Part shown: positions 25,588-47,651 of the stretch, piece by piece | How positions within the stretch are numbered: the stretch's first letter is position 1 | Layout: every line of letters begins with the position of its first letter | The notes under the pieces: generated by a model | Told to the model about the DNA's origin: nothing | The model's database searches: none | What the model saw: the letters and a program-made list of their open reading frames with translations, nothing else | Assembly (NCBI RefSeq): GCF_040938485.1 | Contig: NW_027271682.1 | Span: 3,658,001 to 3,722,000 of the forward strand | DNA from: Diadema antillarum | Lineage: Eukaryota | Reading direction: 5' to 3' | DNA: 64,000 nucleotides | Translations under genes and position numbers: made by a program

Positions 25588-28500
25588 CTAAACAATCATA
25601 TCGTTAAAATACGAGGACCAAGCTTCTTTTCAGCAGCGGCAGCAGCAGCAGTGTTCACAAGTGCAAACAAGACAACTGTAGAAAATTTGAATACTGCCCT
25701 CTTGTGTTGTGGTGTGTCAGTCGTCTTCCCTGGGCTCCCTCTCAACTTGTTCAGTTTGCCTAAGTGGAGTCAAAGTGTTAGGAAATGCCAGGTCCAGCAA
25801 ATGAAGATTCAGCCTTCAGAGGACCTCTCTGGGGGTAAAAGAGGGATGACTGCAACTTTGGTTGATGATCTATTAAACCTCTGCTCTAGTTCCAGTGCTG
25901 ATAGAGCCAAGTTTGTGCAGTTTTGTTGCAGTTATGCTGAGTGAAAAAAACAAAAAAACAAACAAAAACAAAGCATTGTTCATGGATGATTCTAGATGGT
26001 CCTGCTCCATCTCTGCAAATGGTGCCAAAAGTAAGATTTTTTAAAACTCAATTTTCCCACCTCCCCTCCCCCCTTCATTTAAAAGAGGGGGGGAACATTA
26101 AAAGGAAATTCTGGCAAATTGTATAGAGTTAGAGGATGTCAAAATGCCTCAGATTTGAAAAGAAATTGAAATAGGAAGAAGAAAAAGCAAATAATGCAGA
26201 TTTGAACCAAGTGTAACAAAATGTAACCAGACCCATAAACTTATTCAAGACTCAATTGTGGCTAGGTGAGTTCATTTGTTTGATATGATATCCTCAGTTA
26301 CTGTTCAAAAACCATGTGACCGTTACATCATTTTGCATTAAACTTTTCAATTTTTTTTTTTTTGCCTTTCTTGAGGTATCTCAAAGTTCTCTTTAGGGTG
26401 TATGGTGTAAGTCATCTTTTGAGAAATTGATTGAATTAGATAAGAGACTCTTTCATCTGGAATTTGATGATTCAAACTGTTGGTTTTCCAGTATGAATAG
26501 TAGAAATAAGGAGTATCATTTAAAAGATATACGTGGACAAGCCACCAACTTGCCCATTTGCAGGTGCGTATAGAATGTAATTTAAAATCGTTTACTGTTG
26601 TTCAGTCTTGAATCTTATTTCTTGCATCAAAGTTTTATCTTTCCAGACACTGCCATCAATCAAAGCATTCTAAATGTTGTAAATCATCCACTAAGCAACA
26701 ACGGTGACAGTAGCATTGATCAATTCTGCTCTTCGGTTGTCACCTTTTCCAAGGTGATGTGATATCTTTAGGTGACATGGATGTTTAGGCCATGGACTAA
26801 GAGCCAAGACTGTCATTAACTGAATTTCTTTCTTTTTCTCTTTCTCTTTTTTTTTCCCTCTCAATATGATGCCAGAAACAGCTTGACAAATCAAATTTGA
26901 ATCTTGCGCTGGGGTCAGACCATGTCTTGAAAATTGATTTGATAAAGGAGCTGGCATTGGCTAGCTAATTCAATTTACATACTTTCATGCTCAATATAAA
27001 GTGAAAAATGTTGCATTGTCACAGTTTTTGGGCAGGAATCTAGGGCTCCAAACTTTTTTTTTCCATTTTAACAGAATGCAAAGACAAAAAACAAAAACAA
27101 AACAACTTAATAATTTTGACATAAGAAGAGAGCAGAGATGCTTAAATATGGAAATGTAGAAGAAAGTTATGATATTGCTTTAATCGGCATTACAAGTTTT
27201 TACAGCATTAGAAAATTACTTTGGAAACACAGCTGGTACAAACAAATTGTGTGAGTATGCATTTTGAGGCAAAATATCTGTTTTTCACAAAATTAAATTT
27301 AAAGTCACACTGTATATTTTGACTTGCAATAGTTCTGTTGTGTAGTCTTCAGTATGCACTTTCCAACACAAGGGAGGCTGATCATGGCATTGATTTCTAC
27401 AAATGGTTCAATCCTTGTGAAGCAGAATTTTTAGTTTGCAGAGTCTGCTAATGATGTACCTGTGATCCTGTGAGAAAGTCGTTCTGTCGACAAAAATACT
27501 GAATCAAGGACTGGAAAACAGAATGGGAATTTCATGTAGACAGAAGAGTATAAAGATTCCCTTTGAAAGTTCAAGTGAGTTCATGCATACCTTGTGGATT
27601 TTCCCATTGAGTTTGGAAAGTAATACATTCCTAGGATATTCTGTGAAATGTGTGCAAAATCAACATGGGACATTCTGAGCCGATTTGACATTTCTAATAC
27701 TTCCGCACAATGCATCTTTGTCCGGGCATGAGGGAGAGATGGTCCGAGTTCGTCCGACCGACTGCATCAGAGATGGGTGTAGACAGCCCGGGAGTTGGAG
27801 GAGACAGTGCCTAGACTGTTGGGGTAGATTTTTGATCCTCACTCAAGTGGCGCCCCAGTTACAGGTGCCCATCTTTCTTCATTAGAAGAGGTGTGGAATG
27901 ATGAGGGGCTGAAAGATAGGGAGGGGGTGATGCTTAGGGGGGCAAGCAAGAGGGGGCGTGTGGAAGAGTAAAGTAGGGGGTGGCCCACAATGGCTTGCAT
28001 GTCTGTGGTATCTCCTGCGAAGCGCTTCGTGTAGGCCTCCTTTTTGAATCATTATGGTCATTAAGGGGAGTGGGGGGAACGTGTGGTGGTTGGGAGTGAA
28101 GGTTTCTTGTGAAAAAATTAGGTCAGGCCCCATTAAGGATTAAATGTAAGGGGCTCATCTACCTTGCTTTCTCAGGATTTAATCCTCTTCCAGGTGATGT
28201 TTTGAGGCTTTGAGTGGGTTGCAGAGGTGTATAATCAAGTTTAGAAGCCAGGGGGCTGTCACGGAATATATGTGACAGTCTCTCCTGAAGCCTGGGAAGA
28301 TAAGTATTAGCCAGCCCTCTGTGGCAAATCCACTTTAATGTCCAGGAAATGACAGCCAGTGTGAATGAAATTTGGCAACATTGCCAAATACGTTTGGACA
28401 GAATCATGTCTGTGTCAACTGGCAAAATTCTTTCTTTCTTTGTTATAGTGTTCAAATGTCCATTTTCTATCATGGGGTGTCACCATTACAGCGAAATAGA

Positions 28501-29315
28501 GTCACCAATATGATTTTCAGATTTCAATACTATGAAGTTTTTCAGACTCTAAACTTTTCCAGTGATGTGTAACACGTTCCACTTTATTTTTCAAAATGTA
28601 CTATTGAAACAGCAAGAAAGCACCTCACAAGATTAGCACACTTTTGAGAAAAGGAGATTATAAGTTTAGATGAATGCAGTCAAGCATACAGAAGATTAGT
28701 GTGTTGTAACAATGATTCAATTCATAACACAGTTAGGAAAATATTTCATTGAAAACAAAACATTTCACTTATCAAAGTTATCATAGATTCTACATTTCAG
28801 ACTGGAGATAGTTATTTTCATATCAAACTTTTTACTCGATTCACTAGAGGACAAGTGCCAAATTTCTTTATGTGTCAGTGAGATCACCTTTTTTTTACCT
28901 TTTTTTAAAAACAGATTTGTGAGGTTTATGTGTCTGTCACTCTATTCATCCAGAGTACATGTATACACTGGCCTGAGTAACCACCAAACCTACAAAAGAT
29001 TACTTTATAGATTTTTATTTGTGTGTGTGTGTGTGTAACACACAATATTCTGTCTGTCTCTGTGTGTCCACAATTTTTCATGACTGAAAGGGTTGGCTGC
29101 TCCAGAAATGATAGGGTGTACCCTCTTCAAGAAACCTGCTGGTTATGCTTCCGTTCAATATTTTCTACCCTACGGGATGAGAAATTGGGGGAAAAAGAGT
29201 AATGAGTCACCCATTAATTAAGGGAATATGTGTTTGGCTTGGAGTGGATGACAAGACTGCTAGCATAGGCCCATTCTCATTGTAAAATATACTTAAGTTA
29301 ATAATGCACATTGCC

Positions 29316-29408
29316 TTAACCTGTAAAGGACAGGCTGATTTTGTTACAATACGCATTTCCCATAGACACCTGCTCGAGTATACTCAGGACTTGTCTTCAA
29401 CGGGTTAT
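29316..29408 (+). mobile_element. 85-bp piggyBac-like MITE, copy 6
   Basis: TTAA cctgtaaaggac...gtcttcaacggg TTAT; family core present. Confidence 0.8.
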
Positions 29409-30773
29409 GGGGGGGGGGGGGGGGAGGGTCACATGATAAAAATCATGATTTATATTTTTTGTTTTATTTTTTTCAGTGAGCATTCTCATTCTTGTTGTAC
29501 ATTATGACAGCAAACTTCCACGAACCAAAAGTGGAAAAATCACACTCCAGTTTTTCAGATGCCTTTTGACCCAGTTTCTCATTTGATATCGCAATATTCT
29601 TCTGGGAACATGTATGGCTCTCTGGATAGACTGATGTTGTTGAGGTCTCTTTGGGGGGATAAACGGAAATCGGACATTTGTGTCTGAAGGAAACAAATGC
29701 TTTTCCTCTTTGCATTGTTTTTATCAGCAGGGGACTGGGCATCCATGCTCAGATCAGGTTATTTGTATACAATATTAACACTTTGTTCACCAAACAACTT
29801 ACATGTAAGATGAAAAGAGTGGGTACCTTTTTACCTTCTTGACATAATCATTAATATTGATCAGAAGAAGATTTTCTGCAATCTCACAGAGGCACCCCTC
29901 AAGAAAGGTGTACTAGAAAGTTGATAAAGTGGATAATTAGCCTGTGAAAGCCTACCAAGTTAAAGTGAATCCTTTTTAGCTGCACTGTGAAGTGAAAGAG
30001 GAGATTCCAGTCAACAGTAGCCTAGTAGCCTGAACCAAGTGAGAGTGAATGACTTAGTCAAGAACATCGCATTTGTCAAGGTTTTGGCTTCTTGTATTCA
30101 TTTCCATTATGATCCCTATCTAGTCTACCAACTTCACTGATATCCCATCATGCTTTGCACATCGCCAAAACTCCATCCCCATCTTTGTTTTTCTTCCTCA
30201 CTTGTAAATATCGCGATTCCTGACGTTAATTGCTTCAGCTAGCTCGGGCACGGAGAGGTCGAGTGGATAAAGGTACCCAGTCGAGAACCTGCCAGCACCC
30301 CCAAAAAAGTAATTAGAAAGCGAGAGTTGGTGAAAATTTGTGCAGCTAACATGCTGGAATGTTTTGGGATTTTGTTGCTCGCAGTTCAACTTCCAGGTAC
30401 AAACCTGAATTCTCTATAAAACGAGAAGGAAAAAAAAAAGGAATGAGAGAAAGAGAAGGAGAAGGAGAGAAAAAGGGAGGAGTAAGAGATGGAAAGGTAG
30501 GGAGGGACGGGAGAGAATTCTGCCTCATTAGCAAGCTGTCACCATCAACCAGTATCACTGGAACATTTGGTTTGTATTTTGCCGGAAATACGAAAAGGTC
30601 AGTTGCACTGTACTTTCACTTCAAAGCTGACCTGATGAAGCCACATAGCACCAAATTTTGAATTTTTTAATGCAAGATTTTCTACTAGTGGACTGAAACA
30701 AGCAGGAATATATCAACATCCGATGGGGAAAAAGTATACAATCATATGAGTTAAGTACACTCATATGAAGATG

Positions 30774-30866
30774 TTAACCCGTTGAGGACGGTTTGATTTT
30801 GCTACAACGCGCATTTCCCATAGACACCTGCCCGAGTATACTTGGGACTCGTCCTCAACGGGTTAA
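30774..30866 (+). mobile_element. 85-bp piggyBac-like MITE, copy 7 (near consensus)
   Basis: Perfect 13-bp TIRs CCCGTTGAGGACG / CGTCCTCAACGGG with TTAA target site duplication. Confidence 0.9.
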
Positions 30867-30957
30867 ACTACTGAAAAGTCATTCCTACAAATACAAACAC
30901 ACACACAAAGTAATACTCTATGCTAGGATCACTGACAACTAGGATAAAGTTTCAAAC

Positions 30958-31196
30958 GGCCTGACGGGTCTAGGGCAATTACCCCCTGGGCAATTACCCC
31001 GGACCCTTCCCCTGGCCCTAATCCTAATCCTAATCCTGAACCTAATCCTAATGCTAACCCAAACTCCTAACCCTAACCCTAACCCTAACCCTAACCCTAA
31101 TCTTTACTCTAACATTACCACTAACCAGTATTTAGCGGGGGGGGGGGGGGGGGGGTAATTGCCCTCTGGGGGTAATTGCCCGGATACGGGCCTGAC
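30958..31196. mobile_element. About 225-bp MITE carrying telomere-like (CCCTAA)n repeats
   Basis: Subterminal inverted repeats GGGCAATTACCCC (twice) and GGGGTAATTGCCC (twice); degenerate ATCCTA/CCCTAA array with perfect (CCCTAA)5 at 31071-31100; direct flanking repeat GGCCTGA(C) at 30958 and 31189. Confidence 0.8.
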
Positions 31197-33359
31197 CTAT
31201 GGCTTGTTCTACATAGCAACAGCTGATTCATATGGATTGGAGTGCAGATATTGAATGAAAAGCTCATTACTTGGTCCTCTCAGTAGAAGGGACAAAAAAT
31301 TCTATAGAGTTAAGTATACCAGTAAACCAGGCTTTACTATGACTGTACTTGTTTTCTGTGTCATGAGGATGTGTATGAGCATTTTGAAAAACCATTCGGT
31401 GCCAGGGAAATTGGACAATGTATGCAACGCTATGGACTTTTCTGTTTCAGTTGGCACTCAAAGCACCCAAAGAGTTGAAATTGTGACAACAAAGGCAAGG
31501 ATAAACCCTGCCCTTGATCAAGAGCTAGATGTTTTCATTTTATAGGTATATGGAAGCTGATGGCTCAAGTAATTCAGACATGCTTGTGTCATTCCACAGA
31601 ACAAAGCATCAATGCACTATGCTGTTATGATATGTATCTGATGATTTATATAAACTTTTGTCATTCGAGTTCAACTTAGCAAATCATTAAATAACTCCCT
31701 AAGCTGGTAGAGTGTTTGTATTAGTCTTCTTACCATGATGACTGATTGCAAATTATTGTCGATAATGATGACAAGTTTTAATATATGGTAATAATGTATT
31801 TTACTGTATCATTTGTCTTCACTGTATGTTTATAAATGTAATCATGTTCAGCAAGTCATGGCTTCTAACAGAAAAAAAAAATGTTGTTTATCATTCAGTT
31901 GCTTTTGTGAGATTGGAACTTATTTGCTGGATGTCCTGATGTAGACCTATAACATTGAAATGGTAATCAAGCTTTACACGCAAGATTCCATGTGTTCAGA
32001 CTTTTAGGTAACTGCTTTATACCAAATACAATGTGACTTATTGTGGAAGTAGGAGGACTCAAGGAGTACCCCTTCCATTGCTCTGAAACTCACCAGCGAT
32101 GATGAGGAGAAGGTGTTTTGTGTTACATCCTCTCCTCCAAGTATAAGGGGAAGGGGTTCAGCATGGTGGGATTAGGTGAGGACAGAGAAGCCCATACAAG
32201 GCAGTGACCCTGGATGGAAGAAGAGACGGGTCGCTCCCAATCAGGGCAGCTGTACATTTCAGTTCCACGGCAACGCATCTTTGATGCAACCATGTGATGG
32301 AAACTAGTCTCTACATCAGGGAAAATGCATGACTACCTTTTTTTTTGCAAGAGTTGTGCTTTGTTTTGGCCTTCTCTCTCTGTGAGCATGCATGTATACA
32401 CAGTTTTCTCCAGTCTAGGTATCCACACATTTAGCTGTGAATTTATTTATTCATCTATTCAATTATCTATCCATCTACATATTTGTATATCTATCTTTCT
32501 ATCTATCTACTTATCTACCTATCTATTTGTTTATTGTTGTTCCTGTCAATCTATTACTTGTTTGTATATAGTTGTAGTATCATTATTAATGTTATTATTA
32601 GAATTATTTATTTGGTAAAAACTTGCAAAATTGTAGCCCAAAGGCTGAAATACTGCATAAGTGAGTGAAATACATAAATAAAATACATACAAATGAAAAA
32701 AATCTCCCTACCTACCTACCTGCTGACCCAGTGGTAGTCTATCTGTATTCCCACTTTTTGTGTTTTTCTAACCATATCATTACTAAATACTATCTCTTTG
32801 CAATACATATTCAGGAGAAGATTATTTGTATCTATGTAACTCTCCATCTCTGTTTGATATAGAATACAACAGAATCATTTTCGTCTTTTCTGCTGTCTGT
32901 CTCAGACCAAAGATTATCAAATGCTTTTATTTTTTCCCATTGTTCTGTTTTTCTACTTAAGTCAAAGTTAGCAGTCCTGAGTTGTCAATAAGATGCTTTT
33001 TTTTCCAACTTTCCCATGTGAATGAGTAGCTTCTTTGGAAGAAAATCATTAAGCCTGAGTATAGACTAGCCGTTCCTGACAGATCACTTATTCCAAGAAG
33101 GTCTAATAATTCATATCTCCCCTGAGGTAGGACCCTGAATGCAAGCAATGATTATGTTACTGTAGCTCAACAAGATGATTTCACACTCATCCATCAATCA
33201 GAGTTTTCACTGTTTATTTGGAAGAAGTGAGGCCTGGTGTGATATCCTTTAATCTCAATATACATTGTGCCATTTGTATTTATATCCATGAAGGATCTAC
33301 CTCCCCCTCCCTCTCTTTCTCTCTCTCTCTATTACCCCAACTCTTTTTTTCTCTCGCTA

Positions 33360-33369
<10 letters not shown>

Positions 33370-33404
<35 letters not shown>
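33370..33404. repeat. (CT)n microsatellite
   Basis: Directly visible. Confidence 0.92.
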
Positions 33405-33410
<6 letters not shown>

Positions 33411-33583
33411 ATATATCTATCTCTCTTTTCATTTGTCTATTCATTTATCTGGCACTCAGTTAAATTGATATGCAGAAATGTTTTTACTTTATTTCTTTAT
33501 CCTATTTAGTTACTTCTATTTCAGTATGTTTTTGCAGTGCCCATTGAGGTCTGTAGGAACGTGTATTAGAAAGTATATTAAAG

Positions 33584-33794
33584 TACTGTAAAACGAGTAA
33601 TTTTCGCGTGCACTTTAATTTCACGAATTTCGTGAGCGCCAAGATTCGCGAAATTAAGATGCACGCGAAAGTCCTTGTTTACGCTATTTGCATTGAACGC
33701 CAGTGGCACTTCGCGAAAATTTCGTGCCACGAAAAAGGCTGTCGGTTCCAATTCGCGAAAAATTCATGCCGCGAATATATCATGTTTTACAGTA
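33584..33794 (+). mobile_element. TA-target MITE, copy 2
   Basis: Colinear with 12605-12798; same TIRs. Confidence 0.85.
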
Positions 33795-36700
33795 TGGTGC
33801 ATGAAATAAGCGGGGGGAAAAAATGAATATGCTTATTCAAACACTTCTTCATTGGCAATTATCAACCCCCGAGCAGTGACGGCAAATGCTGTTCTGAGAG
33901 TGGTCACTTTTTAGTCAGGGAACTTGCTCTTTGTTTGGTCAGATTATCATTTATTATAAAAGTCTACAAATATTTTGGCATGATAAACTTCATTCTGTGG
34001 TGGTCAGCTGTTTCTATGTTGATCCCGCCTGTCATAAAAGCTTAGAGCTTTGATTGATATAAAAATACTTTGTTTACATCTCTTTATTGCTCACATAACA
34101 AGATTCTGTCCATCCTCTTTCTTTCTCTCTTTACTATCTTTATGGGGATGACAGCGGGCATCATGTCATATCTATAAATGACTTGTGATGTCAGCTGCTA
34201 AATATCTCTAAGCCTTTGTTTATCCAATGAGTTAAATGTTTCCAATGCCAAATATTCTTATTCCCCAAAGCCACTGTTTTCTGAAGTTGCAGCAAGTGAG
34301 AAAGAGATTATTTCCCACTCACCGACATTTCAGTCCCTTGCATTATCATTCGCCAAAGTGAGAAAAAAAAGTACTCAGCCAGTAATGGGCTGATTTGTTC
34401 ATACAATCTAATCAATTATGAACAGTGAGAATAAATGTGAGTATTCACAAACATTGTATCTAAAGTTTTCAATTGTGATTGTAACATGTTAAAGACTAGA
34501 AGACTTCAGGGTTTTTTTCAGTATTTAAAACATACTTCTGCATAGACTTTCTGCTAAATAGGTCACTTCTAGTTCTATCCAATGTTACTTCAGTTTTAGC
34601 GAATGGAGTCGATGTCTGTCAGGCATAGCAGAGATGAGATGCAAGACAATACTGTACAGGAGAATGATAGTGAAATCAGTTACACATGTCCTGCAAGAAA
34701 GATACTGTGTTGGAGTCCTAAGGGAGAAGTGATCACTTTTTCATTAGAACAGAGTGCTTGTTTTGATAAATATTATGAGCCAGTGATGAGGGGGTAATTG
34801 AAAAAAAAAAAAACCAAATCAGACAATACTTACTGGAAAGAACAAAATTACACTCATACTGTTCTAGGTAAAAGTCTTCAGGCCAATTTCATAAATAAGA
34901 ACATACTAGTTGACTGTTGATAGTATTTCTTACTCTAAATGTGCACAGAGCAAATCACCCCCATTTTGAAATGTTAGTAGCCCAAACAGGCAAGCGAGAT
35001 GATTGGATGGAGCTTTTCTTGTTTATGAATAGTCATGAGGAGGCTCCCTTTCATGCTTATTTTGCAAAATGTGGTTGGTGGAATGACTCATGAATAATTC
35101 ATGACAAAGTGGTGCCAAGTCGTTGTCCTGTGACTGCTTCTCATTGCTCTGTGATTGAACTTTGTACTGTGGTGCATGCTCTTGTTACTGGTCACGTTGT
35201 TTGAAATGCTTCTTTAGCACACATCAAACTTGGATTAGTTCCATTATGGGCTGTGGGGGTACTCACAAATATGAAATATACAATGACCAAGTTACCTTCT
35301 GCTTCTTTTCTTTCCTCGTGGAGTTTCAGAGGGGAAAATCATTTGTATCTGCCAAGTACTTCTTGGCACCACCCCAAGAAAATTGAGCAAATATGCCAAT
35401 AACACTAGCTGAGAGCAAAGTGTATTTGCAGCTCAAGATTTCTTTGTGTTCTTGTGAGGTTGTATAAATTGGGTCTTTGAGCACATGTGAATCTTATTTA
35501 AATGTAGGCTCCTTCTTCTTATCATCATCAAATTTTTTCAGCTGTCCGGCCAGGGAAGCATTATCTTTAATTCAGTGACTTCTCTCGCTCTTTTTTCTTC
35601 TTCTTCTTCTTCTTCATCTCCTGCTTACTGGCAGTGACACTGGTATTGTGTGAAGATGAAAACTTTTTCATTTACCGTTGTAGTATCACCCAGAGCATAT
35701 ATTTGCTTTCTCATGGGACGGGCTCTGCCAGTTCGAAGCTGAACTTGTTTGCTTGCAGGCAAGTCATGGAGTCCTTGAGCTAGCATGCTAGCACTAGCAC
35801 TGGCTGTTTAGCGTCTCAGTAGCGACTTGGTGGCGATGTTTCACTGGTGGTAGATGCTCCGGACACCTCACAGGGCAGTAAGAGGAGACAGATGTGGGCA
35901 GGATCTCTGTTGTTCATCTCAGTAGAGCATCTATAGGTTCCTGCTGTGACTCCAGAGCCTGTATTCTTGTCGCTAACAGAGAGCTTGGCTCCACTAGGAG
36001 CGGTGGCAGCATCCGAGGGTTGACTCGTGAGCAACTGGTCCCTCATCTCCATCTCCCCTCTCTCACTTTACTCTAACCCTGTCTCTCTCATTTTCTCCTC
36101 TTCCTCTCACCCTTACCTTCCTTCCTTGCCCTCTCATCCTCCATCTCGTCACTCGACCCCATCACATCTGCCGGACCGTGTTCTCTTCGAGTTTTGCTCC
36201 TCCCACCCGGGAGTGGATGTTGAAGTGAGGACAGAGAGGTTATGTTGGATGTTGTTCATTTAAGAGGAAATTGAAATCCGCCCTACTCACCATTTCCTCT
36301 GCAGTGGCAAGAGTATATTAGGCATTGAAGACGCAATGAGTATGGCTCTTGGGTCCTGCCAAGACCCCTGATTAAACGCTCCTAAGCAAAAAATTTTTGG
36401 TCTTGCTAATCAGGAGGTCTCGTGTGTACTCGGAACAGCCACGAGGAATGTCGGTGGAATTAGTGTTTGAAGATTCCATGGAAGAAACCTCTTATGAACT
36501 TTTCAAGACTTTCAGTGTGGCATCAACATTAATCCTCCTCAAGTCAAGCCTTGAATTACTGAAGACACCAAGGGTGATACCTACACTTTGGAGCAATAAG
36601 TGTTAGGTGGAAATCAGGTGGCATTGCCAGTTACAACGTGCTAGAGCCTCACATCTTTCTTTCTGCCACACAAAAAACAACAACGACAATTTGAGTTACC

Positions 36701-36857
36701 ATGGCAATTGTGATGAGTAGGAGGAGAGTGATTTTGCTAGCCTGCATCTACCTCTTGTTGGACTTCTCCCCGGCAGAAGGTAGTGGGAATAGAATGACCC
36801 TTCCAAGGTGGATGAGGAACATGATTCCTCAGTACAGATCTCCAAAAGCAGACAGAC
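36701..36857 (+). CDS. Candidate alternative first coding exon with signal peptide (short isoform), or first exon of a nested secreted-protein gene
   Basis: Kozak ACCATGG. MAIVMSRRRVILLACIYLLLDFSPAEG has a basic n-region, hydrophobic h-region and an A-x-G cleavage motif, followed by SGNRMTLPRWMRNMIPQYRSPKADR. Ends with the donor AC|GTAAGT at 36858 in phase 1 (157 nt = 52 codons + 1). Confidence 0.65.
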
Positions 36858-36927
36858 GTAAGTTGGATTTCGCTTTGCTTTTATTTTCATAAATAATCTT
36901 TGTGTGGTAAGTGTGATAATAGTATTT

Positions 36928-37288
36928 TGTTGTTGTTGTTGTTGTTGTTCATTTTCCATCTGTGAAGATGGCTGGATAGCCCATATTCAGCTACACTAAG
37001 CTGGTCTTCCATGGGGTCCAGTTTGATGTGGGGTGGGACCACTTCACCGGGTTAGACACCCTGCTCTTTGCGATGAATGAATGAAGCGGGATCTTTTACG
37101 TGCATGAGCTGTGACTCTCTCATACACGGGACCTCCATTTTATGTCCTATCCGAGGGACAGAGTGTTTTGCCTCTTGCTAGAGGGGATGGTATGTTTACA
37201 CACAACATTGCTCAGTCCAGACTCGGGTTCGAACGCGGGCCGCGTGATCGTGAGGCAGACGCACTACCGACTGAGCCAACTCACCGCC
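36928..37288 (-). mobile_element. Full-length tRNA-derived SINE with Nin/Deu core domain and (AAC)n tail
   Basis: Minus strand: GGCGGTGAGT, A box TGGCTCAGTCGG, B box GTTCGAACCC, core CTCGGATAGGACATAAAATGGAGGTCCC...AAAAGATCCC...CGCAAAGAGCAGGGTGTCTAACCCGGTG resembling the Deu/Nin consensus as recalled, tail (CAA)n. Confidence 0.85.
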
Positions 37289-40200
37289 CTTAATAATTAT
37301 TAAGCTTTTCCCTGTGTTTGGTGGTGCTATTTGGCATTTGCAAATCAGTACTGGGTATTTCGAGTAAGAATGAGTACTATTTATCATAAGAGCTTATGTT
37401 TATCATTCCTGAACTCAGTATCTAACATTTTGTAAATGTGATTGCATGTATAACTTTATGCTCTCTTTTATCCTTTGGACTTTGAGAAGCTGCCTTAACA
37501 ACACGTAGAACTCAAAGAAAATGCAAGGTAGTTGTATGACCAATGCCACTTACACTTCATCTCTTCTTTTTCATATTTTTTTGAAGATGAAGTTGCACAA
37601 ACATTAGATGGGTGAGCAAAGTTCAAGGACCAGCAACTTCCGTATCACAACTCCATGAATCAATGAGAGGTTTATCAGAAAGCATCTCAACAAGTGTGCT
37701 CGCTAGACACCCACGAGGTGCTACTATACAGAGCACTGCGTACTACCACTACCAGGTGCCAAGTTGTGTTTTGCCCTATTTATTTACTTACAGTGAAAGA
37801 GCAGACGCGTTAATATGAAATCACCTGCTATTGCCAATGTTGCAGAATGTTATCATGATTATCGCTGCGTCAATGGACTTTGAATGTCATTCATGGAAGC
37901 TGTAAACATGCTTGAAGACCAATCTTCCATGTTTGCCAATGATCACAGATATACTAAGTATTGTATGCTACTAGTCGGGGAGTTTGGATGGTGTTGGACA
38001 TGAGTGTGTACAAAATGCATTCTTGTATTTACTTGTGATCTTAGGAGTGCTTTTCAAGAGGTGCTTATAACTCCTCTGCTCTGTCCGTATTGTCAATTCC
38101 TATTCATTCAAGTTGCAAAATAGTGAGAATTCATGATGCCCATAGTTGCACACACATGCTCGCATATACACGAACACACACACATGCATGCAAATAACAA
38201 CAATTAAACAAATTGTGCTGGTTATATGCTATGTCAATTCAAGACAATTCCACTCTGCGAAAGAAGGAACAGTTCAGAAAATGTTTTAGAGATTTTAGTG
38301 TGATTCCTTTCCTGGTGATTTCTGAAGGTTTTCTATGGCTTATCTTTCATAGCTTTGAAATCTGGGACAGAGATGTAAGTTGTTTGGGAAGATGAAGCAT
38401 CACTAATGACTGTAGACATTGTCATTCGATTGGTATTGCTTCACATCGGTTTGGGAGACTCAGCTTCATTTGGTGAAGTAGAGTTTGTATTTTGGTTGCC
38501 CCGAAGTATCACCCCCAAGTTGAAATGGAGGGCCATTTACACTGCTGTTTTCAATATTGCGACAGTTTGGTGAAAGTTGCCAGTGTAACCAAGCCTGGAA
38601 ACCACTCAGAACAGCACCATATAAATCTTTTGCTGGAGGGCAATTTATCATACTTGACATCAAGTTTGCTGTCACAATTTGCAACATGAATCCTAACCAC
38701 TGAACACTCATGATTTTTTTTTCATGTTAATGTTTAGACTACTCCCGTGGCCACATTCTAAATATAGCTTGAACCGACCGTGCTATTGTTGGATCAGTTG
38801 CATGCTGCAGACTACGAAACCAAATGTGAATGCACTATGTTAAGATTCATGATTTTTCTCCGGTGACTTGATGCTGCAATTGTTTGTTGAGGTGTAAATG
38901 ATTTTTTTTTTCTTTTAATGTTATGATGTTTCACAATGGATTTACCCTTATACTAGAATGTGATCATATATCACACAGACCTGCTGTAGCAGCAGTAGCA
39001 GGAACCAACAAGTTTTGAAAGAGTTCAGCGGATAAGGCCTGCAAAACAGCACTAACAACATTCATCTGGCAAAAAGAGAAATTGTATTCTTCTCTCTGAT
39101 GTGAAATTCTCTGTATGCACAGTATAAACAGAGAAGAAATGATAGTAAGAACAAGGAATAAAACAAGGGACTCTTTTAGAGATATGTTTTTTTGAAGTAC
39201 AGTTGTAGTGGCAGTCACACACCCACCACTGACATACTGTCCAAATATGCTCTCAAGCATAGAACGATTGCATTGTTCAACTCACGAATGTCCTTCTGCT
39301 GCTTGCAATAACAGAAACTAGCAGGGGAAGAAGAAAAGAAGAGATAATATTTAAGAATTTGCTCATCGAGCTCCTATTGAGGTAAAAGTATCATCAAAGC
39401 TCTACCAAAGACATGCAAGTGCAGACATCCAGGTTTGACTTTTCATTTAAAGGGGCTACTTACTAATGGGAGAATTTGTTTATGCTTAGGTTTCTGCAAC
39501 ATATTTTTTAAGTGAGTGTTCTCTATCAACTGGAAACTGAAATTGACATCCATACACTGGCCACAGTCTATATCACTCAAGTATGCAGTTCCTGATATTG
39601 ACCTGATTTAAGGTCAAGCTATAATACAAAGTGAGCTCTATGCCTCTATGATTGTGCAAAACTAGACTGCAAAGCGCCCCTGGACCATAGTGGCCAAACA
39701 CTGCAATTTGGAGCAACTTGGAGCGACATACATCACGAAGACATTTCTCAATTATGAGAAGCATTTCTTAATCTGTTTGCAAATGCATTATTTGCATTTT
39801 GAAATGACCCTTAGGCAAGGCAAGGAAAAGTCAACGAGTGTATAATGAACAGGTGATTTTTGACCCAAACACCAATGGAGTCTGCAATTCAAGGGACAAT
39901 AATGCCATTGCCGAGTTCACACAGGGCTGCCTTTCACAGAAATAGATAAGTCTGGTATTCAAATATTTGTTTTCTAAAAGTCATAATTTCCTGTAATAAG
40001 AGTCGATGCTGTTCTTGTAGTTGTTTATGACATTGAAATGCACACTTAATCATTACCAAGAATCAGGACCTGTGTTGACAAATACATGTCTCATTGTGTA
40101 GCAAATCAGTTATTCAGTCTGGCTTTGATTACCTCAATACAGTTTTAATATTGGGCCTATGCTTGTAGATTGATATGGATCCTAGTCAGTTACATGTACA

Positions 40201-40363
40201 CTAGACGAAAACATCATGTTTTAACAAATGTACAAATGTACAACAAATGTAATCCATCTTTAGGTCTCCATGATGTTTATTGGTACAGTGTAGTCATTGC
40301 ACATGGATCAGAACAGTTGACTTGCACTATTTTCTTGTTAACACTTTCCAGTTATCCATGAGG

Positions 40364-40578
40364 TACTGTAAAACAACAAAAATTTGTTAGCATGCATTTT
40401 AGTTTCACAAATTTTGCAAGAGCCAAGAATTATGAAATTGAAGTGCATGTGAAAGTTCTCATACACTATGTATGCAGTGAATACCAGTGGCAATTTGTGA
40501 AAACTTCAAGCCATGAAAAAGACCATCGGCTCCAATTCGGAAAAATTTCATGCTGCAAAAATATCTTGCTTTACAGTA
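40364..40578 (+). mobile_element. TA-target MITE, copy 3, heavily CpG-decayed
   Basis: Colinear with 33584-33794, but CG is mostly replaced by TG or CA. Confidence 0.8.
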
Positions 40579-43369
40579 GTTTATCTGTGTTTTGAGATAG
40601 GCCTGCTACTTTTGGAAGAAGATCTGTAGAAACCAAAAATTAAAATCAACCAATGGAAACTGACTTTAACGTTGAGGTATAGTGGGATAAGATGTTGAAT
40701 GATGAAGATTGCTTTAGAGATAACATTCATTGATATTTTCAAACATCAGCCTTAGGACAAGATTAAGATAGATGCCAAGATGCCAAGATATGTAGTATTC
40801 ATTCTTGTAGTCACCAGGGGGAAACAAAGTACTTGACCCCACCCCCCCCCAAAAAAAAAATGTTTCTCATCCTTCGTCAAGCCATGTATCACATACCATG
40901 TTAGAATCCATTCACTTTTTATGGAAGATAACCCCTAAGCATGGATCATTTCCCTAAAGCCCACAGGAAGTGTTCTATCTCATCATCTTGAGTAAGAGAT
41001 ATGATAAAGAGATATAAATTCTTCTTCAGTGCGTGCCAGTGGGAACAACGAACTCGTTTGCCGACAACTTTGAGACTGGTCGGGACATCACAACAGACTT
41101 TATGTCTCCACATGTCCTGAGTCAAATGTCAAGTACATTTCCTGTGTCTGTTTCTAGGATTTTATTTCCAAATGATAAAAGGATGAGCAAAAGACAAAAA
41201 CAAAAACAAACAAAAAAAATGAACAAAATACAAAAAACAAAGTAGTGAGTAAGTAGGTTTAAAATCATCATGGACTTTGGCCCTCAAAGTTGGCAACCTC
41301 AAGTCCATTTCAAATTTCATTTCTGGATGCAATCTATTTAGTGCAGCAAAGCCTGGAAAAGATGAATCAACAATTTGAGTGATATCTTATATTTTGTTCA
41401 TTTTCTCTCACTTCTTTTGCACCCCCCCCCCCCCTCTTTATCATCACAATTTCCCTGGATTTGGCTTCATTTGAGAAAATTAATGTGGGTATAGAGAGTG
41501 CCAAGTGTTTAGTAATGGACACACAAGAGGTATATTCCCGAAAGATGTGAGGCACAAGTGTGAGGTCCATGAACAAGAGAAATCTTGTAATGCCTTCAAC
41601 AACAACAAAAATGAAACTACAGCACAACAATTTTGACAGAATGACCAGACCTTGTGAAAGCAGTATCTATATATAAGTACACGTGTATGCAAAAGATGAT
41701 TGATATTTCTGTTGAGTTTCATTTTTCAAACAATGAATTAGAATTTCACTATTGAAATAAAAGCAAGAACAATTTTAACAAATGATGAAAGACCAATGCA
41801 CCTTTTTTTTTTGGTCAAATTTGGGATTGTTTTCATTAAATGCTTGACAGATGCATATGTGGGCCTTTAAAGAAAAATTTCATTTCTTGTTCAAGTTGTC
41901 ATTTAGGACCAGAGGACTAGAAGTATAATGAAAAAGTTGACAGAAAGTAAAACAGCTGTGGGTGTAGAAATTTTCATATCTTTTACAAGCTACACTGCAA
42001 GCAGCTTTTTGCTTAGCTTCATTTTTGGAAATGAATTTAGTAGAAAAAAAAATATTTCACTCACAACAAAACCTTCTGAAGTTGCAATGAAGATGCAAAG
42101 ATGATTCTAAAGGGAGAGTTTGAGTTGCCAAATTATTGGTCAAAAGTATGATGTTTAGATATAATGTACAGATCAATGGCAGACTTGAAATGACATCATC
42201 ACTTCATTAATTTGCATATGTGCTTGTGACCAATTTATATTCATTTTTTTATTCAAAAAAATCATTAAAACCTTTAAATGCTTTCACTCTCTCATTTAAT
42301 TTCTTATTTGATTCTATTTATTTGACTTTATCTGTCAAAGGCACAATGAACATGGTGCTCCCCTTTAAGACTCCTTCATAGTTTTGCATTGTTTGTTTCT
42401 TATTCGACTTTAAGCTGCTACTTTAACCTCCACAGGACGCCATGTGTATGTCTGTAGACATTTTTGGTTCTTCTCTTTGTCCTGTGGTTACTAATGACGG
42501 TCTCTACTGCAGCATCAATACTTCTTGCAGTCTTGATCCTCATTGGCTCCTCCCAGCATTCTCTCCTGCACAGTTTGTCCAGTAAAAAGAATTTCTGGGG
42601 GGAAATCTTGCTAGATTGGCCCCTCGGTGAGATCACAGCAACGCTTGTCAGAATCCTCCTCACAGGGACAATAATTACCAATTACGGGCGAAATAATAGT
42701 CTCTTCCTTCCGGACGGAAATCGGCTCACCGCTTTCATGTGAGGTGCCAAGTGTGGAGATTACGGCATGGATGATGTCTAGAGACACCCCTCTACGTCAT
42801 GAAGATTCTCTTAAAAATTGCGCTGTAAACTTGCATTTGAACTATGTGTCACTATCAAAGCACATTCATTTTTTTGTGTGTTAAGAACAAAACAAAAACA
42901 AAAACAAACAATACTATGACAGTTCACATAAAAGTCTCTTTTTACGTCCCTCTATCTCTAAAAAACAAAATAATTAAAAAAAAGCAATACCAACATGGTA
43001 ATACAAACATATTTACGACTTGACAAGAGTAAATATTCCATGTGAATTAAAATGAAATGATTGAATTGATATGCAACACTTCAGTCTATGGTAAGTTATA
43101 AGGAGCACATAAATCATGGTGATATTAATCTTTAGTGTTTGTGGTACTTCATTTTATGGGGGAACTGTAGGCTTTGCTGGGTCATGCATGTCCTAGAGTC
43201 GTGTCACTTTTTAGTATCTTATCTCCAAAGAAGAATGGGATATGTTCCCCCAAAAAGCACTGACACAAAGAAATTTCCAGGGGTTTTGGCCTGAGATTCT
43301 TCTCCTGTAAAGGGGAGAGGGGATGCCTGTAGCCCCTTGACCCTACCATGAGCAATTGCTAAAAAGTCA

Positions 43370-43547
43370 TACTGTAAAATGAGGAATGTCCGATTTTGCG
43401 AGAGCCGAGATTTGCGAAATCAAAATGCATGTGAAAGTTCTTGTCTACACTGTATGCATTGAATGTTAGAGGCAACTCGCAAAAAAAAAGGCTGTTGGCT
43501 CCAATTTGCCAAAATTTCATGCCGCGAAAATATCATGTTTTAATGTA
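43370..43547 (+). mobile_element. TA-target MITE, copy 4, with internal deletions
   Basis: tactgtaaaatgaggaatg...gccgcgaaaatatcatgttttaatgta. Confidence 0.75.
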
Positions 43548-46500
43548 CATGTTGTGCCATGTTCACTTCATGCATTGATTTTTGAGCCTGAGTTACATGG
43601 GAAGTCTCTTTCCTGAAATCCTCTCAATAACCTAACTCTTCCCGAGAATGGATCTTTATGAATAAATCAAGATCTTACTAACACAATTCTGGACAACTAA
43701 TGATAGATGATTCCTTGTATGGTCAAAAAAAAAGAAAAGAAAAACAATCATCTGGACTCTATTTGATACACCCCAGCCTCTCGCAGCCTTTCTAGAACTT
43801 GTCCAGGTGAGATGCCCGTTAGATTAGAAATCAAATTTTTTAGTCCAAGATGGAACCAATGGATCTCATGGTGAGAGTTAATGAAGTCACCGGACTAACC
43901 CCAGCAAGCGCTGCATGAGCTTTGAATTCTGCCTGAATATTCAGGAAGCCACCCCCAAAATAATGCAGTATGATGCTCTTCTCTCGTACCCATATCAAAT
44001 CATCCAGACTTGAAGTTTGGGATGCCGTTGAAAAACAAAAAGAAAAAAATGACTTACAAAATTAAGAAAAATAGTTCTTCTGTGAAAGAATGATGTTATG
44101 AAGGAAATGTTGAAAATATGTGCATAAATTAAGTTTGTTTTTTTATAGCAAAATTCATCAAAACCAAACAGCTGCTGACAAACACGTTTTCCACTTTCCT
44201 CATTTTCTTGTACTAAAATATCCAAAGTGTACTGTCCTACCAGGGAGGTGGGAAGCGATTTCTTCCCACCTCCCTGGTCCAACAGATCAACTTCTGAGCA
44301 CATACTTTTCTCGTTAGGCAGATTATTGAAATGCATTTCAAATGTATTAAATATCACAATTAGCGACTGTGTCTTGAGATTGTGTGAGCTTATATCAAGC
44401 CTTTACAAGTTCTGAGTCTTTTTTTTTTTCATGTGCAAAAAAAGAATTTGAGATCAGATTAAGATAAAATGGTGCATGGATTTGGTAAGCCTTTCACAGG
44501 GGGATCCCATCAAGACGTACCAAACTGGTAGAAACTTTATAAGTAGAAATGATAGATTTCTATCTTTAAGTCATTCTGGTTGAAAAGTCGTTGCTTGTAA
44601 GAAGTGTATGCACGCAAGCTGTAGGCCTATATGAGACAGAATTAAAATACTATGCTATCAAGGAAAGGAGTTTCACCATTTCATTGCCAAAAAGTTATTT
44701 TATATGGTGGTCTGTAGGCATGTCAATTTGTCAGGATTCAACTTTTCATGGGCAAACAGTTTGACAGTCGTTACTGAAATATGATGCATACATTTCATGT
44801 ATTATTGATGCCATCCTAATCTTGTTGGTTGCCAAAATGATTGTCACTTTTGTTGCCAAGATGATTGTTACTTTTGTGATAAGCTATTCTGCACACTTTT
44901 TGGGGGGGTATTAGAATTTTTTAGTGTTTCACCACTATTTAGCATCAAGGCAGATTATTTGGGCATTAGCTACTCCCTTTTGTCTAACAAGTTGCAGTTG
45001 TGAAGGCTATACATGCAGTGAAAGGAGCATTCCAAGTAGGATGTATATTACCCTTGACATTATCACCTGGTCCAACTTACTGTTTTTATGGACTCCCATG
45101 GTTGATAATTGCATCTTGACCGGAGTCAGAGTCTGCGATTAATTTTCTTATGCCGATTTTTCCGTTCTTTGCTGATTAACTCTCACTGTGCACTCACCGA
45201 AGATAGTTCCTGTTGAAAGTCATAACTGCGTTTCTCCAATAAGATCAATGCACTTTTGGGTGTTCTTTGATGATCAGCAAGGGTAGGCCAGATATGAGCA
45301 TCGCTGTGAGTTGTTTGATGCCTCTTTTTCTTTGAAGTCTCTCTTTCTTTGAAGTAAAGTCACATGATATGCAGAAGGTAATAGAAAGTTTTATTTAAGG
45401 TAAGCATACTGTGTGTTTCGGGATGGATGGAAGTTGTATGCATACCAATAGGAGCCTTTGTATCAGTAGCGAAAAGCCATGGGGTTTTTCACATGTCTTA
45501 AACAAAAGCGGAAAAAAGGAAAAGAAAAAGAAAATATTGCCAAGGCCAATTGCCATGTAGGATGTGACATAGCTTTGGTATGAAACATTTGAATTTGGCA
45601 GTCAGCAGGGAGACACATTTTAATGTCTTACCACTCATTAACTCATAGCACATTTAAAAAACACATTTCAGACAGGATTAATGTCGAGTTTAATTCTAAG
45701 TGTGTGAAACCCCTTAGTTTTTTTTTCCCCCCTCCCAGTTCTTAGAAGTGTTCATGTGTGTATGTGTGTGTGTGCGGGTATGATATGTATGCGAGTCTGA
45801 TATTGTGTATATTTGTGTGTATCTGTATGTGTGTATGTATGTAATTCCATTTAGTAGGGTAAGTTGGATATTTATTGACCCAGGGCATAGAACATAATTC
45901 ATGCATGCTGATGCTACATGTTGGCATTCGCTGGCTCTTTTTTTTTTTTTTTTTTTGACATTACTTCAGACAGAATATGTTTTGACAGCAGCCATCTGAC
46001 AAGCTCCAGCTTTTACAAAGGAAGTTTATTGTCAGTTTTTTTTTTTTTTTGGAGTATGCAATAGCAACTGCAACAACAACAACAAAAACAACAAATGTTG
46101 ATCATGTGGTCATGCCAGAACATAAAATTGTTATTGGCAATTTCATATCCTAATCAGCCATCTGTCAGACAGTGATTTTTGTTTTATTTTGAGAAATAGA
46201 TGTCAAAAGTATTTTTCTTTTCTAAATGGAATACATGTTGACTTGTTTGTATTTCATGTTCTACTTACGGTGGAGCTCTTTTATAATCTATGTTTGTGGT
46301 ATTGTTTCTTCATATCATTATCTAACTGGGCTATTTTTCAGTGCCATTTTCCCCAAGTACCATCCTCATCACCATTATCATTGTTATCATCATTATTATT
46401 AATGTTATTACTGATTTTTAACAAAATAGATTTTTTTTGGCATAATGTGAAAAAGTCTTTGACCCACGTAAGCTGTGCTTTTAATAATGCGGTAACAGTG

Positions 46501-46561
46501 TCTTTAGTAGTCTCTTTATTTTTTGTTAAAACAAAATAAAAAAAAAATAAAAAGAAAAAAA

Positions 46562-46633
46562 ATGGAGGGCGTGCACCCCCCTTTAATTTTGTAAAGTCGC
46601 CTCCCCTTTACGGAATTTTTGGATCTGCCCCAG
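46562..46633. mobile_element. Probable terminal fragment of a hAT-like MITE
   Basis: Reverse complement begins CTGGGGCAGATCCAAAAATTCCGTAAAGGGG, a common invertebrate (C/A)GGGGCGGATCC-type end; no partner end found. Confidence 0.3.
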
Positions 46634-47369: not shown

Positions 47370-47462
47370 TTAGCCCATTGAAGACTAGTCCCGAGTATAC
47401 TCGGGCAGGTGTCTATGTAAAATGCATGCTATAGCAAAACCAGCCCATCCTCAACCGGCTAA
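47370..47462 (-). mobile_element. 85-bp piggyBac-like MITE, copy 8 (diverged)
   Basis: cccattgaagactagtcccgagtatactcgggcaggtgtctat...ccatcctcaaccgg; flanks TTAG/CTAA. Confidence 0.75.
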
Positions 47463-47651
47463 CTTTATGCTTTGGTGTGACACCTACATGATCATCTCTC
47501 ACCAATGGTATCTACTTAGAAGAGATTTGATGGGAATAGAGTTATGTATGAAAGAAAATCGAAGCCTACTACAGTTAACTTATTTACCTCCTGGAAATGA
47601 ATGAGCCTCAAAAGAAATCCTTGCCCATTCAGCCATGCAGGAATCAGGGGG

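What the first reader, a model, noticed from the sequence alone, without database searches (positions are those of the whole stretch)
36701..36863. Signal-peptide exon deep inside a punctin-gene intron: candidate short-isoform first exon
Seen: about 11.7 kb into the 34-kb intron there is ACCATGG, a signal-peptide-like sequence (MAIVMSRRRVILLACIYLLLDFSPAEG), a 25-residue tail and the donor GTAAGT in phase 1, the same phase as the host intron. Splicing to 59192 reads through in frame (…KADR-R-QQTSVLEC…). Established: C. elegans madd-4/Punctin makes long and short secreted isoforms from alternative promoters, and these direct cholinergic versus GABAergic postsynaptic identity. Inference: this deuterostome punctin gene may have an analogous internal-promoter short isoform lacking the cysteine-rich and spacer domains. 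Caveat: joining to 59192 starts the protein at half a TSR, so the true acceptor may be another exon, or this may be a nested gene.
Basis: partly seen in the sequence, partly recalled or inferred. Interest (0 to 1): 0.82.

Follow-up and report, generated by a model that had tools for sequence, protein, structure and literature searches.

The report
Conserved short-isoform first exon of punctin
A small exon hidden in a 34-kb intron of a sea-urchin (Diadema) punctin/ADAMTS-like gene is a real coding exon kept for hundreds of millions of years in sea urchins and starfish; it most likely starts a shorter secreted form of the protein, like the short punctin that organises synapses in nematodes.

Summary
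The window has ACCATGG, a 52-codon ORF with a signal-peptide-like start, and a GTAAGT donor in phase 1 at 36701-36863. It lies inside the 24960-59191 intron, which splits one thrombospondin repeat of the Diadema antillarum ADAMTS-like 1/3 (punctin) gene.

- The S. purpuratus RefSeq model XP_030833073.1 (997 aa) begins with the orthologous exon.
- The exon is intact in the same intron, on the same strand, in six species: Diadema, S. purpuratus, L. pictus, Patiria, Asterias and Acanthaster.
- All six keep the ATG with A at -3, a hydrophobic core, a shared RLSLPxWMR motif, a strong donor and phase 1.
- For the mature tail, S. purpuratus versus L. pictus gives dN 0.017 and dS 0.93. The flanking intron does not align with Diadema.
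- No second conserved coding block lies between this exon and 59192.
- I did not detect the exon in two crinoids.

No RNA data were reachable, so transcription, the internal promoter and secretion in Diadema are inferred. The exon is unannotated in every species except S. purpuratus. This is a new member of a known kind, the MADD-4B/PunctinS-type short isoform. An earlier scan note reports the same exon on another piece of this genome.

The parts
36701..36857 (+). Alternative first coding exon of the punctin/ADAMTS-like gene (157 nt, phase 1). It encodes 52 residues plus the first base of the junction codon.
   Evidence: Sequence and translation. phmmer hit to the N-terminus of S. purpuratus XP_030833073.1, E 3.5e-8. 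Orthologous exons found in 5 other echinoderm loci.
36701..36781 (+). Predicted signal peptide. n-region MAIVMSRRR, h-region VILLACIYLLL, c-region DFSPAEG. Predicted cleavage after A-E-G, which satisfies the -3/-1 rule.
   Evidence: Heuristic scoring. The sequence diverges but the hydrophobic core is kept in all six species. The orthologous segment is predicted helical in the AF2 model of the S. purpuratus protein. SignalP was not available.
36782..36857 (+). Conserved 25-residue N-terminal tail of the mature short isoform (SGNRMTLPRWMRNMIPQYRSPKADR). Its core motif R[LM][ST]LPxWMR is shared with starfish.
   Evidence: 19 of 25 residues identical to S. purpuratus with synonymous sites saturated (pS 0.91, pN 0.14). 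S. purpuratus versus L. pictus gives dN 0.017, dS 0.93. The segment is predicted disordered with one helical turn at RWMR.
36858..36863 (+). Splice donor GTAAGT, phase 1.
   Evidence: GTAAGT in 5 of 6 species, GTGAGT in L. pictus, phase 1 in all six.
36695..36704 (+). Start-codon context gttaccATGG (A at -3, G at +4), preceded by an in-frame stop at 36692-36694.
   Evidence: A at -3 in all six species.
24842..24959 (+). Host exon of the long isoform. It holds the end of the spacer and the first half of the second TSR (..GWKTRGWSRCSASCGGG), with a phase-1 donor. The short isoform skips it.
   Evidence: tblastn of D. antillarum P0006.
24960..59191 (+). 34.2-kb phase-1 intron of the long isoform. 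It contains the alternative first exon and, presumably, its promoter.
59192..59318 (+). Shared exon holding the second half of the TSR. It is the acceptor for both the long-isoform donor (24959) and the short-isoform donor (36857).
   Evidence: P0006 and P0001 both map here. It is the only other conserved coding block in the interval.
7333..7581 (+). Host exon encoding part of the ADAMTS spacer (long isoform only). Boundaries are approximate, taken from tblastn.
   Evidence: 100% identity to P0006 residues 214-296. Pfam ADAMTS_spacer1 covers P0006 residues 211-315.

Best explanation
Window 36701-36857 is the isoform-specific first coding exon of a short form of the Diadema antillarum punctin gene (ADAMTS-like 1/3, MADD-4 family).

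Proposed mechanism:
- A transcript starts inside the 34-kb intron.
- It is translated from the ATG at 36701.
- It splices from the phase-1 donor at 36857/36858 to the phase-1 acceptor at 59192.
- It then continues through all downstream exons.

The predicted product has about 993 residues. It carries its own signal peptide, cleaved after about residue 27, and a conserved disordered 25-residue N-terminal tail with the motif RLSLPxWMR. After the tail come the second half of TSR2, the remaining thrombospondin repeats, the Ig domain and the PLAC domain. It lacks TSR1, the cysteine-rich module and the spacer of the 1275-residue long form.

Shown here: the exon, its frame, donor and phase; its orthologues; purifying selection on it; and the same join in a RefSeq model of S. 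purpuratus.

Inferred: transcription from an internal promoter in Diadema, actual secretion, and any division of labour between long and short forms like that of C. elegans PunctinL and PunctinS.
For: 1. Sequence features are confirmed.

2. Searching the 52-residue peptide against 1.84 billion representatives gave one biologically meaningful hit. It is the N-terminus of XP_030833073.1, 'ADAMTS-like protein 1' of S. purpuratus (997 aa, E 3.5e-8). Its next residues are the orthologue of the 59192 exon. The three other hits were repetitive proteins.

3. In the S. purpuratus locus the exon is at L001:10001-10166 with donor GTAAGT in phase 1. It lies 8.4 kb downstream of the gene model that ends in the first half-TSR, and 21 kb upstream of the second half-TSR exon.

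4. Intact orthologous exons occur in the same intron and on the same strand in L. pictus, Patiria, Asterias and Acanthaster. Each has an ATG with A at -3, a hydrophobic core, RLSLPxWMR, a GTAAGT or GTGAGT donor, and a length equal to 1 mod 3.

5. Non-circular profile tests agree. An urchin-only profile ranks the Patiria exon (E 2.6e-4) and the Acanthaster exon (E 2.4e-3) as top foreign hits. A starfish-only profile ranks the L. pictus exon (E 1.6e-3) and the S. purpuratus exon (E 8.6e-3) top.

6. Selection on the tail is strong. S. purpuratus versus L. pictus gives dN 0.017, dS 0.93. Diadema versus S. purpuratus gives pN 0.14, pS 0.91. The signal-peptide part evolves faster, as signal peptides usually do.

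7. Between Diadema and the camarodont urchins, only this exon and the 59192 exon are conserved in the interval.

8. Pfam confirms that the short model lacks ADAMTS_CR_3 and the spacer but keeps the TSRs, Ig and PLAC.

9. C. elegans Punctin makes long and short isoforms from alternative promoters. Only the long one has the cysteine-rich and spacer modules, and the short one has its own signal peptide (PMC13142758; PMC11385328).
Against: - No RNA evidence could be obtained for Diadema. The one public run found is a low-depth genomic skim whose contig is colinear with the genome.
- The evidence behind the S. purpuratus RefSeq model could not be inspected, so the model may be partly ab initio.
- No transcript-derived protein fragment with the junction is in the protein collection.
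- No Diadema, Lytechinus or starfish annotation contains the exon. The L. pictus model skips it and starts in an exon 460 nt upstream.
- There is no CpG island at the presumed promoter; CpG o/e is 0.3-0.5.
- The product starts with half a TSR, which leaves two cysteines without their usual partners. AF2 does not show the tail completing the fold; tail pLDDT is about 50.
- The donor has C at -1, which gives a modest PWM score of 3.2 bits against about 6 for the host donors.
Confidence: 0.85

Rival explanations
1. First exon of an independent secreted-protein gene nested in the punctin intron. It would splice to exons other than 59192.
For: Many nested genes lie in long introns. No RNA data for Diadema link the donor to 59192.
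Against: The S. purpuratus model joins the exon directly to the half-TSR exon. blastn and tblastx find no other conserved coding block between the exon and the acceptor in Diadema versus S. purpuratus or L. pictus. The donor phase matches the host acceptor in all six species although exon lengths differ: 127, 145, 145, 157, 166 and 166 nt. In starfish the exon sits only 2.3-2.8 kb from the acceptor.
Confidence: 0.05
2. A cassette or 'poison' exon included in transcripts from the long-isoform promoter, not a first exon with its own promoter.
For: An AG lies 5-7 nt upstream of the ATG in several species. In Diadema an acceptor at 36694/36695 would by coincidence keep the long-isoform frame (reading). 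L. pictus has an annotated exon 460 nt upstream, so the ATG exon may not be the very first exon of the transcript.
Against: In S. purpuratus the same reading hits a stop after 6 codons. Conservation starts at the ATG, and Diadema has an in-frame TGA three codons upstream. There is no polypyrimidine tract before the Diadema AG. Inserting a hydrophobic signal sequence in the middle of a TSR makes no structural sense. RefSeq in two camarodonts starts separate models inside this intron, with separate upstream models.
Confidence: 0.05
3. Chance ORF or decayed relic that is no longer used in Diadema.
For: Signal-peptide-like ORFs are common in AT-rich introns, about 6.5 per 64 kb. There is no promoter-like CpG signal. 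The Diadema annotation lacks the exon.
Against: The ATG, frame, hydrophobic core, motif, donor and phase are all intact after a Diadema-camarodont split that saturated synonymous sites (pS 0.91), while pN is 0.14 in the tail. The same holds in three starfish. An unused exon would not keep this.
Confidence: 0.03

Closest known systems
C. elegans MADD-4B / PunctinS (short isoform of madd-4/Punctin)
   Same: Both come from the same gene family (ADAMTSL1/3 orthologues). In both, a short isoform starts from a first exon internal to the long-isoform gene and has its own signal peptide. Both lack the cysteine-rich and spacer modules and share the C-terminal TSR-Ig-PLAC part with the long form (PMC13142758; PMC11385328; PMC8258370).
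   Different: In C. elegans the alternative promoter, secretion and synaptic functions are demonstrated experimentally. Here they are inferred. I could not establish whether the two start points are positionally homologous. The echinoderm form begins inside a TSR and carries a conserved RLSLPxWMR tail, which I could not compare with MADD-4B.
S. purpuratus RefSeq model XP_030833073.1 (ADAMTS-like protein 1, 997 aa)
   Same: It is the orthologous isoform: same exon, same intron, same phase-1 join to the half-TSR exon, and the same downstream domains.
   Different: It is an automatic gene model in another species, with 60% identity over the 45 aligned residues of this exon. There the locus is annotated as two genes, one of 330/331 aa and one of 997 aa, whereas the Diadema annotation has only the 1275-aa long form.
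Vertebrate ADAMTSL1 (punctin-1) and ADAMTSL3 (punctin-2)
   Same: They are homologues with the long-form domain order TSR1, Cys-rich, spacer, TSRs, Ig, PLAC (PMC13142758).
   Different: The literature I read describes them as sharing PunctinL organisation and reports cleavage products, not an internal-promoter short isoform with its own signal peptide. The shorter vertebrate, hemichordate and insect models I inspected start at internal methionines or differ elsewhere, and none has a unique signal-peptide exon.

Membership tests
ADAMTS-like 1/3 (punctin, MADD-4) gene: the host | Domain order TSR1, ADAMTS cysteine-rich, spacer, multiple TSRs, Ig, PLAC, with no protease domain | tested here: met
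   Window exons are 100% identical to D. antillarum P0006. Pfam on P0006 finds TSP_1 at 52-95, ADAMTS_CR_3 at 100-200, spacer at 211-315, TSP1_ADAMTS repeats, Ig_3 at 965-1028 and PLAC at 1242-1271. The best homologues are ADAMTSL1/3 and madd-4.
PunctinS/MADD-4B-type short isoform | Isoform-specific first coding exon located inside the long-isoform gene | tested here: met
   The exon at 36701-36857 lies in intron 24960-59191. Orthologous exons are present in six species. It is used as the first coding exon in XP_030833073.1.
PunctinS/MADD-4B-type short isoform | Own signal peptide | tested here: inconclusive
   The heuristic n/h/c regions and the -3/-1 rule are satisfied, and a hydrophobic core is conserved in six species. 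The segment is helical in the AF2 model. No SignalP run and no secretion assay were possible.
PunctinS/MADD-4B-type short isoform | Lacks the Cys-rich and spacer modules but shares the C-terminal TSR-Ig-PLAC part with the long form | tested here: met
   The in-frame phase-1 join to 59192 is confirmed. Pfam on the orthologous short model P0001 shows no CR or spacer, with TSRs, Ig and PLAC present.
PunctinS/MADD-4B-type short isoform | Transcribed from an alternative internal promoter | not testable with these tools
   No RNA run was available for this genome. Indirect support: RefSeq models in S. purpuratus and L. pictus start inside the intron. About 600 bp upstream of the exon is conserved between those two species. 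There is no CpG island in Diadema.
PunctinS/MADD-4B-type short isoform | Distinct function from the long isoform (in C. elegans, GABA-A receptor clustering versus acetylcholine receptor clustering) | not tested
   This rests only on analogy with the C. elegans literature.

The most novel reading that the evidence does not exclude
The two-promoter long/short punctin architecture, with a short form that has its own signal peptide and lacks the Cys-rich and spacer modules, may be an ancestral bilaterian feature shared by nematodes and echinoderms rather than a nematode peculiarity. In that case the conserved RLSLPxWMR tail would be a previously unrecognised short-isoform-specific linear motif, for example a binding site. 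Deuterostomes might then also use a long/short punctin code at synapses or in the matrix.
Probability: 0.2. Interest if true: 0.8.

Novelty: new member of a known kind. Interest (0 to 1): 0.6.

Why it matters
Punctin/MADD-4 is a synapse organiser in C. elegans. There, the choice between long and short isoforms sets cholinergic versus GABAergic postsynaptic identity.

In the papers I read, the deuterostome orthologues ADAMTSL1 and ADAMTSL3 are described only as resembling the long form.

A short-isoform first exon with its own signal peptide, conserved from sea urchins to starfish, shows that at least one deuterostome phylum has kept an equivalent architecture under strong selection. From general knowledge, that split is roughly 450-500 million years old.

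This gives three things.
- A concrete test: isoform-specific probes, knock-downs and reporters in sea-urchin embryos and larvae.
- A new conserved motif to study.
- A correction for genome annotation. The exon is missing from the Diadema, Lytechinus, Patiria, Asterias and Acanthaster models I inspected, and the S. purpuratus and L. pictus loci are annotated as two genes.

Tried and rejected
- **RNA evidence.** The look-up of sequencing runs returned one run of unknown kind. Read laying showed it is a low-depth genomic skim. Its contig 36601-36774 is colinear with the genome, so it carries no splice or expression information.
- **CpG-island test for a promoter.** None at 35-37 kb.
- **Word-indexed searches for other proteins with the exon.** P0001 region 1-60 found only P0001. 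P0001:1-170, tried in order to catch short transcript-derived fragments, found only a genomic read-through ORF of the next exon.
- **Shorter annotated isoforms.** I inspected those of Asterias amurensis, Ptychodera, cichlids and locusts. None has a unique signal-peptide exon.
- **Crinoids.** There was no significant match in the orthologous intron of Anneissia or Antedon by tblastn, motif or profile. The exon is absent there or diverged beyond detection.
- **Loci I could not fetch.** D. setosum, L. variegatus and the second D. antillarum contig have gene ranges over 100 kb. Isoform X2 of L. variegatus and of Ptychodera are not on record.
- **AF2 model of the S. purpuratus N-terminus.** I built it to see whether the tail completes the half TSR. 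The tail has low confidence and is not packed, so there is no support for complementation.
- **Cassette-exon reading.** Rejected because the frame is not conserved in S. purpuratus.
- **Nested-gene reading.** Disfavoured because no other conserved coding block exists in the intron.
- **Other searches.** tRNA and Rfam scans of the window found nothing. A literature search for the RefSeq accessions found nothing.

Full report
**Observation**

- The start context is gttACCATGG, with the ATG at 36701.
- The ORF runs 52 codons plus one base. It has a basic n-region (MAIVMSRRR), an 11-residue hydrophobic core, a c-region ending A-E-G, and then a 25-residue tail.
- GTAAGT lies at 36858-36863. The exon is 157 nt, so the donor is in phase 1.
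- An in-frame TGA lies three codons upstream of the ATG.

The host intron is real. Exon 24842-24959 ends ..WSRCSASCGGG with a phase-1 donor. Exon 59192-59318 begins QQTSVLEC and ends NCPPR. Together they form one thrombospondin type-1 repeat, split by a 34.2-kb intron. Joining 36857 to 59192 is in frame.

**Identity of the host**

The window's exons are 100% identical to D. antillarum XP_071506076.1 (P0006, 1275 aa, named 'ADAMTS-like protein 3'). They are slightly less similar to the D. setosum orthologue.

Pfam on P0006 gives TSR1, ADAMTS cysteine-rich, spacer, many ADAMTS-type TSRs, an Ig domain and PLAC. This is the ADAMTSL1/3-MADD-4 (punctin) architecture. That long model uses the 24959-to-59192 splice.

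**Chance**

My signal-peptide heuristic plus a donor weight matrix, run on Markov-3 simulated 64-kb sequences, gave the following per window on both strands.
- 6.5 signal-peptide-like ATG ORFs.
- 0.54 with a usable donor.
- 0.07 with a Kozak context as well.
- 0 of 200 simulations with Kozak plus GTAAGT.

The candidate has the most hydrophobic core among the + strand candidates in the real window. This is suggestive, but it is not decisive for a scan of many windows.

**Decisive evidence: orthologues**

*The S. purpuratus model.* I ran phmmer with the 52-residue peptide against 1.84 billion cluster representatives. One hit was biologically meaningful: the N-terminus of P0001 (E 3.5e-8). The other three hits were repetitive proteins.
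- P0001 is XP_030833073.1, 'ADAMTS-like protein 1 [Strongylocentrotus purpuratus]', 997 aa.
- Its sequence reads: a signal peptide, then SENRLSLPRWMRNMLPQYRSPKQHR, then SQQTSVLDC...

*Its locus (L001).*
- The exon is at 10001-10166 with donor GTAAGT in phase 1.
- The next exon is 21 kb downstream.
- A separate 330/331-aa gene model (TSR1, Cys-rich, spacer, first half-TSR, then read-through of the donor) ends 8.4 kb upstream.
- An older S. purpuratus model, XP_785459.4 (1265 aa), joined both parts.

*Other species.* I then looked in the orthologous intron of every echinoderm locus I could fetch.

| Species (locus) | Exon coordinates |
|---|---|
| L. pictus (L002) | 10553-10718 |
| Patiria miniata (L003) | 8536-8680 |
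| Asterias rubens (L004) | 57340-57466 |
| Acanthaster planci (L006) | 69408-69552 |

All six species, including Diadema and S. purpuratus, share these features.
- An ATG with A at -3.
- A hydrophobic core with a 10-residue Kyte-Doolittle mean of 2.3-3.1.
- The motif R[LM][ST]LPxWMR.
- A GTAAGT donor (GTGAGT in L. pictus).
- A length equal to 1 mod 3, although lengths vary from 127 to 166 nt.

*Non-circular profile tests.* An urchin-only profile ranks the Patiria exon (E 2.6e-4) and the Acanthaster exon (E 2.4e-3) as best foreign hits among all six-frame fragments. A starfish-only profile ranks the L. pictus exon (1.6e-3) and the S. purpuratus exon (8.6e-3) first.

*Crinoids.* Anneissia and Antedon gave no significant match in the orthologous intron.

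**Selection**

For the 25-codon mature tail:
- S. purpuratus versus L. pictus gives dN 0.017 and dS 0.93.
- Diadema versus S. purpuratus gives pN 0.14, with synonymous sites saturated at pS 0.91.

The signal-peptide part evolves faster (dN 0.17, dS 0.71 between the two camarodonts), which is usual for signal peptides.

The three-species DNA alignment shows conservation with Diadema only from the exon's coding part to the donor.

blastn of the whole Diadema intron against the L. pictus sequence returns the exon as the only significant collinear hit (E 5e-9). Against S. purpuratus the other hits are repeats. With tblastx, only the exon and the 59192 exon are strong conserved coding blocks. This argues against a nested gene with further exons.

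**What it most likely is**

It is an alternative first coding exon giving a short punctin isoform of about 993 residues (52 + 1 + 940). That isoform carries its own signal peptide and lacks TSR1, the Cys-rich module, the spacer and the first half of TSR2.

Pfam on the orthologous short model confirms that CR and spacer are lost while the TSRs, Ig and PLAC are kept.

This is the conserved state in all lineages, not a sign of a wrong acceptor.

I built an AF2 model of S. purpuratus residues 1-170 with a 62-row alignment. It predicts:
- a helical signal peptide;
- a low-confidence, disordered tail with one helical turn at RWMR;
- a moderately confident two-stranded remnant of the half TSR (pLDDT about 65-81);
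- a confident next TSR.

The tail is not predicted to complete the fold. Its spacing from the junction also differs between starfish and urchins. I therefore read it as an autonomous short linear motif. This is an inference.

**Promoter**

An internal promoter is inferred, not shown.
- RefSeq models in S. purpuratus and L. pictus start within the intron, and separate upstream models exist.
- The roughly 600 bp upstream of the exon is well conserved between those two species.
- The L. pictus model starts in an exon 460 nt upstream of the ATG exon and skips it. The S. purpuratus equivalent of that upstream exon has neither the ATG nor the GT.
- In Diadema the upstream region does not align with the camarodonts. 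It shows a GC bump (0.50-0.53 at 35.8-36.4 kb) but no CpG island.

**RNA evidence**

No RNA evidence was reachable. The only public run found is a genomic skim.

**Comparison with what is known**

C. elegans Punctin/MADD-4 produces long and short isoforms from alternative promoters. Only the long form has the cysteine-rich and spacer modules. The short form has its own signal peptide. The two forms have distinct roles at cholinergic and GABAergic neuromuscular junctions (PMC13142758; PMC11385328; PMC6920096; PMC8258370).

The same papers describe mammalian ADAMTSL1 and ADAMTSL3 as sharing the long-form organisation.

I found no paper on an echinoderm short isoform. No annotated protein other than the S. 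purpuratus model carries the exon.

So this is a new, unannotated member of a known kind of isoform, and one automatic model in a related species already captures it. I could not test whether the echinoderm and nematode short forms are homologous or convergent.

**Earlier scan note**

Note s1-217878 reports a 157-letter signal-peptide first exon inside an ADAMTSL/punctin gene on another piece of the same genome. D. antillarum has a second contig with this gene (P0132 and P0133). I could not fetch that DNA, so it is not independent support.

**Verdict**

- Transcription, secretion and function remain to be shown.
- My confidence in the short-isoform first-exon reading is 0.85.
- Interest is 0.6.

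Noticed in passing
window 49000-50200: A CpG-rich island of about 1.2 kb (CpG o/e 1.1-1.45, against a window mean of 0.42) lies deep in the same punctin intron, 12 kb downstream of the new exon. It could be an unmethylated regulatory element or a young repeat.
   Followed up: no
window 36900-37300: A high-copy repeat sits immediately 3' of the exon. Depth exceeds 100 in the genomic skim. Loose ends contain GGGAATCGAACC, which looks like a reverse-complemented tRNA T-arm, suggesting a tRNA-derived SINE on the minus strand. ARAGORN and Rfam find no intact RNA gene.
   Followed up: partly
L001:1-1571 and L001:10001-55997 (S. purpuratus); L002 (L. pictus): Current RefSeq splits the punctin locus into two gene models in S. 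purpuratus (330/331 aa plus 997 aa) and in L. pictus (199 aa plus 970 aa). The S. purpuratus N-terminal model ends by reading through the phase-1 donor (..CSASCGGGKHYRYL stop). An older S. purpuratus model and the L. variegatus and Diadema models join both halves. This is either an annotation artefact or a hint of an N-terminal-only product.
   Followed up: partly
L002:10001-10093 versus L001:9452-9540: The L. pictus model P0128 starts in an exon 460 nt upstream of the intact signal-peptide exon and skips it, giving a protein with no signal peptide. The S. purpuratus equivalent has GTG instead of ATG and CTGAG instead of GTGAG. The L. pictus CDS start is therefore probably a 5'UTR exon that has been misread or variably spliced.
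   Followed up: partly
L006:33354-34442 (Acanthaster planci): A 362-residue rhodopsin-type GPCR gene (7tm_1) is called inside an upstream intron of the Acanthaster punctin gene, on the same strand. It is a genuine nested gene, but it is unrelated to the exon studied here.
   Followed up: no
window 35800-36400: Local GC rises to 0.50-0.53, against 0.39 for the window, just upstream of the exon. CpG is not enriched. The region contains proline/serine-rich ORFs on the + strand.
   Followed up: no
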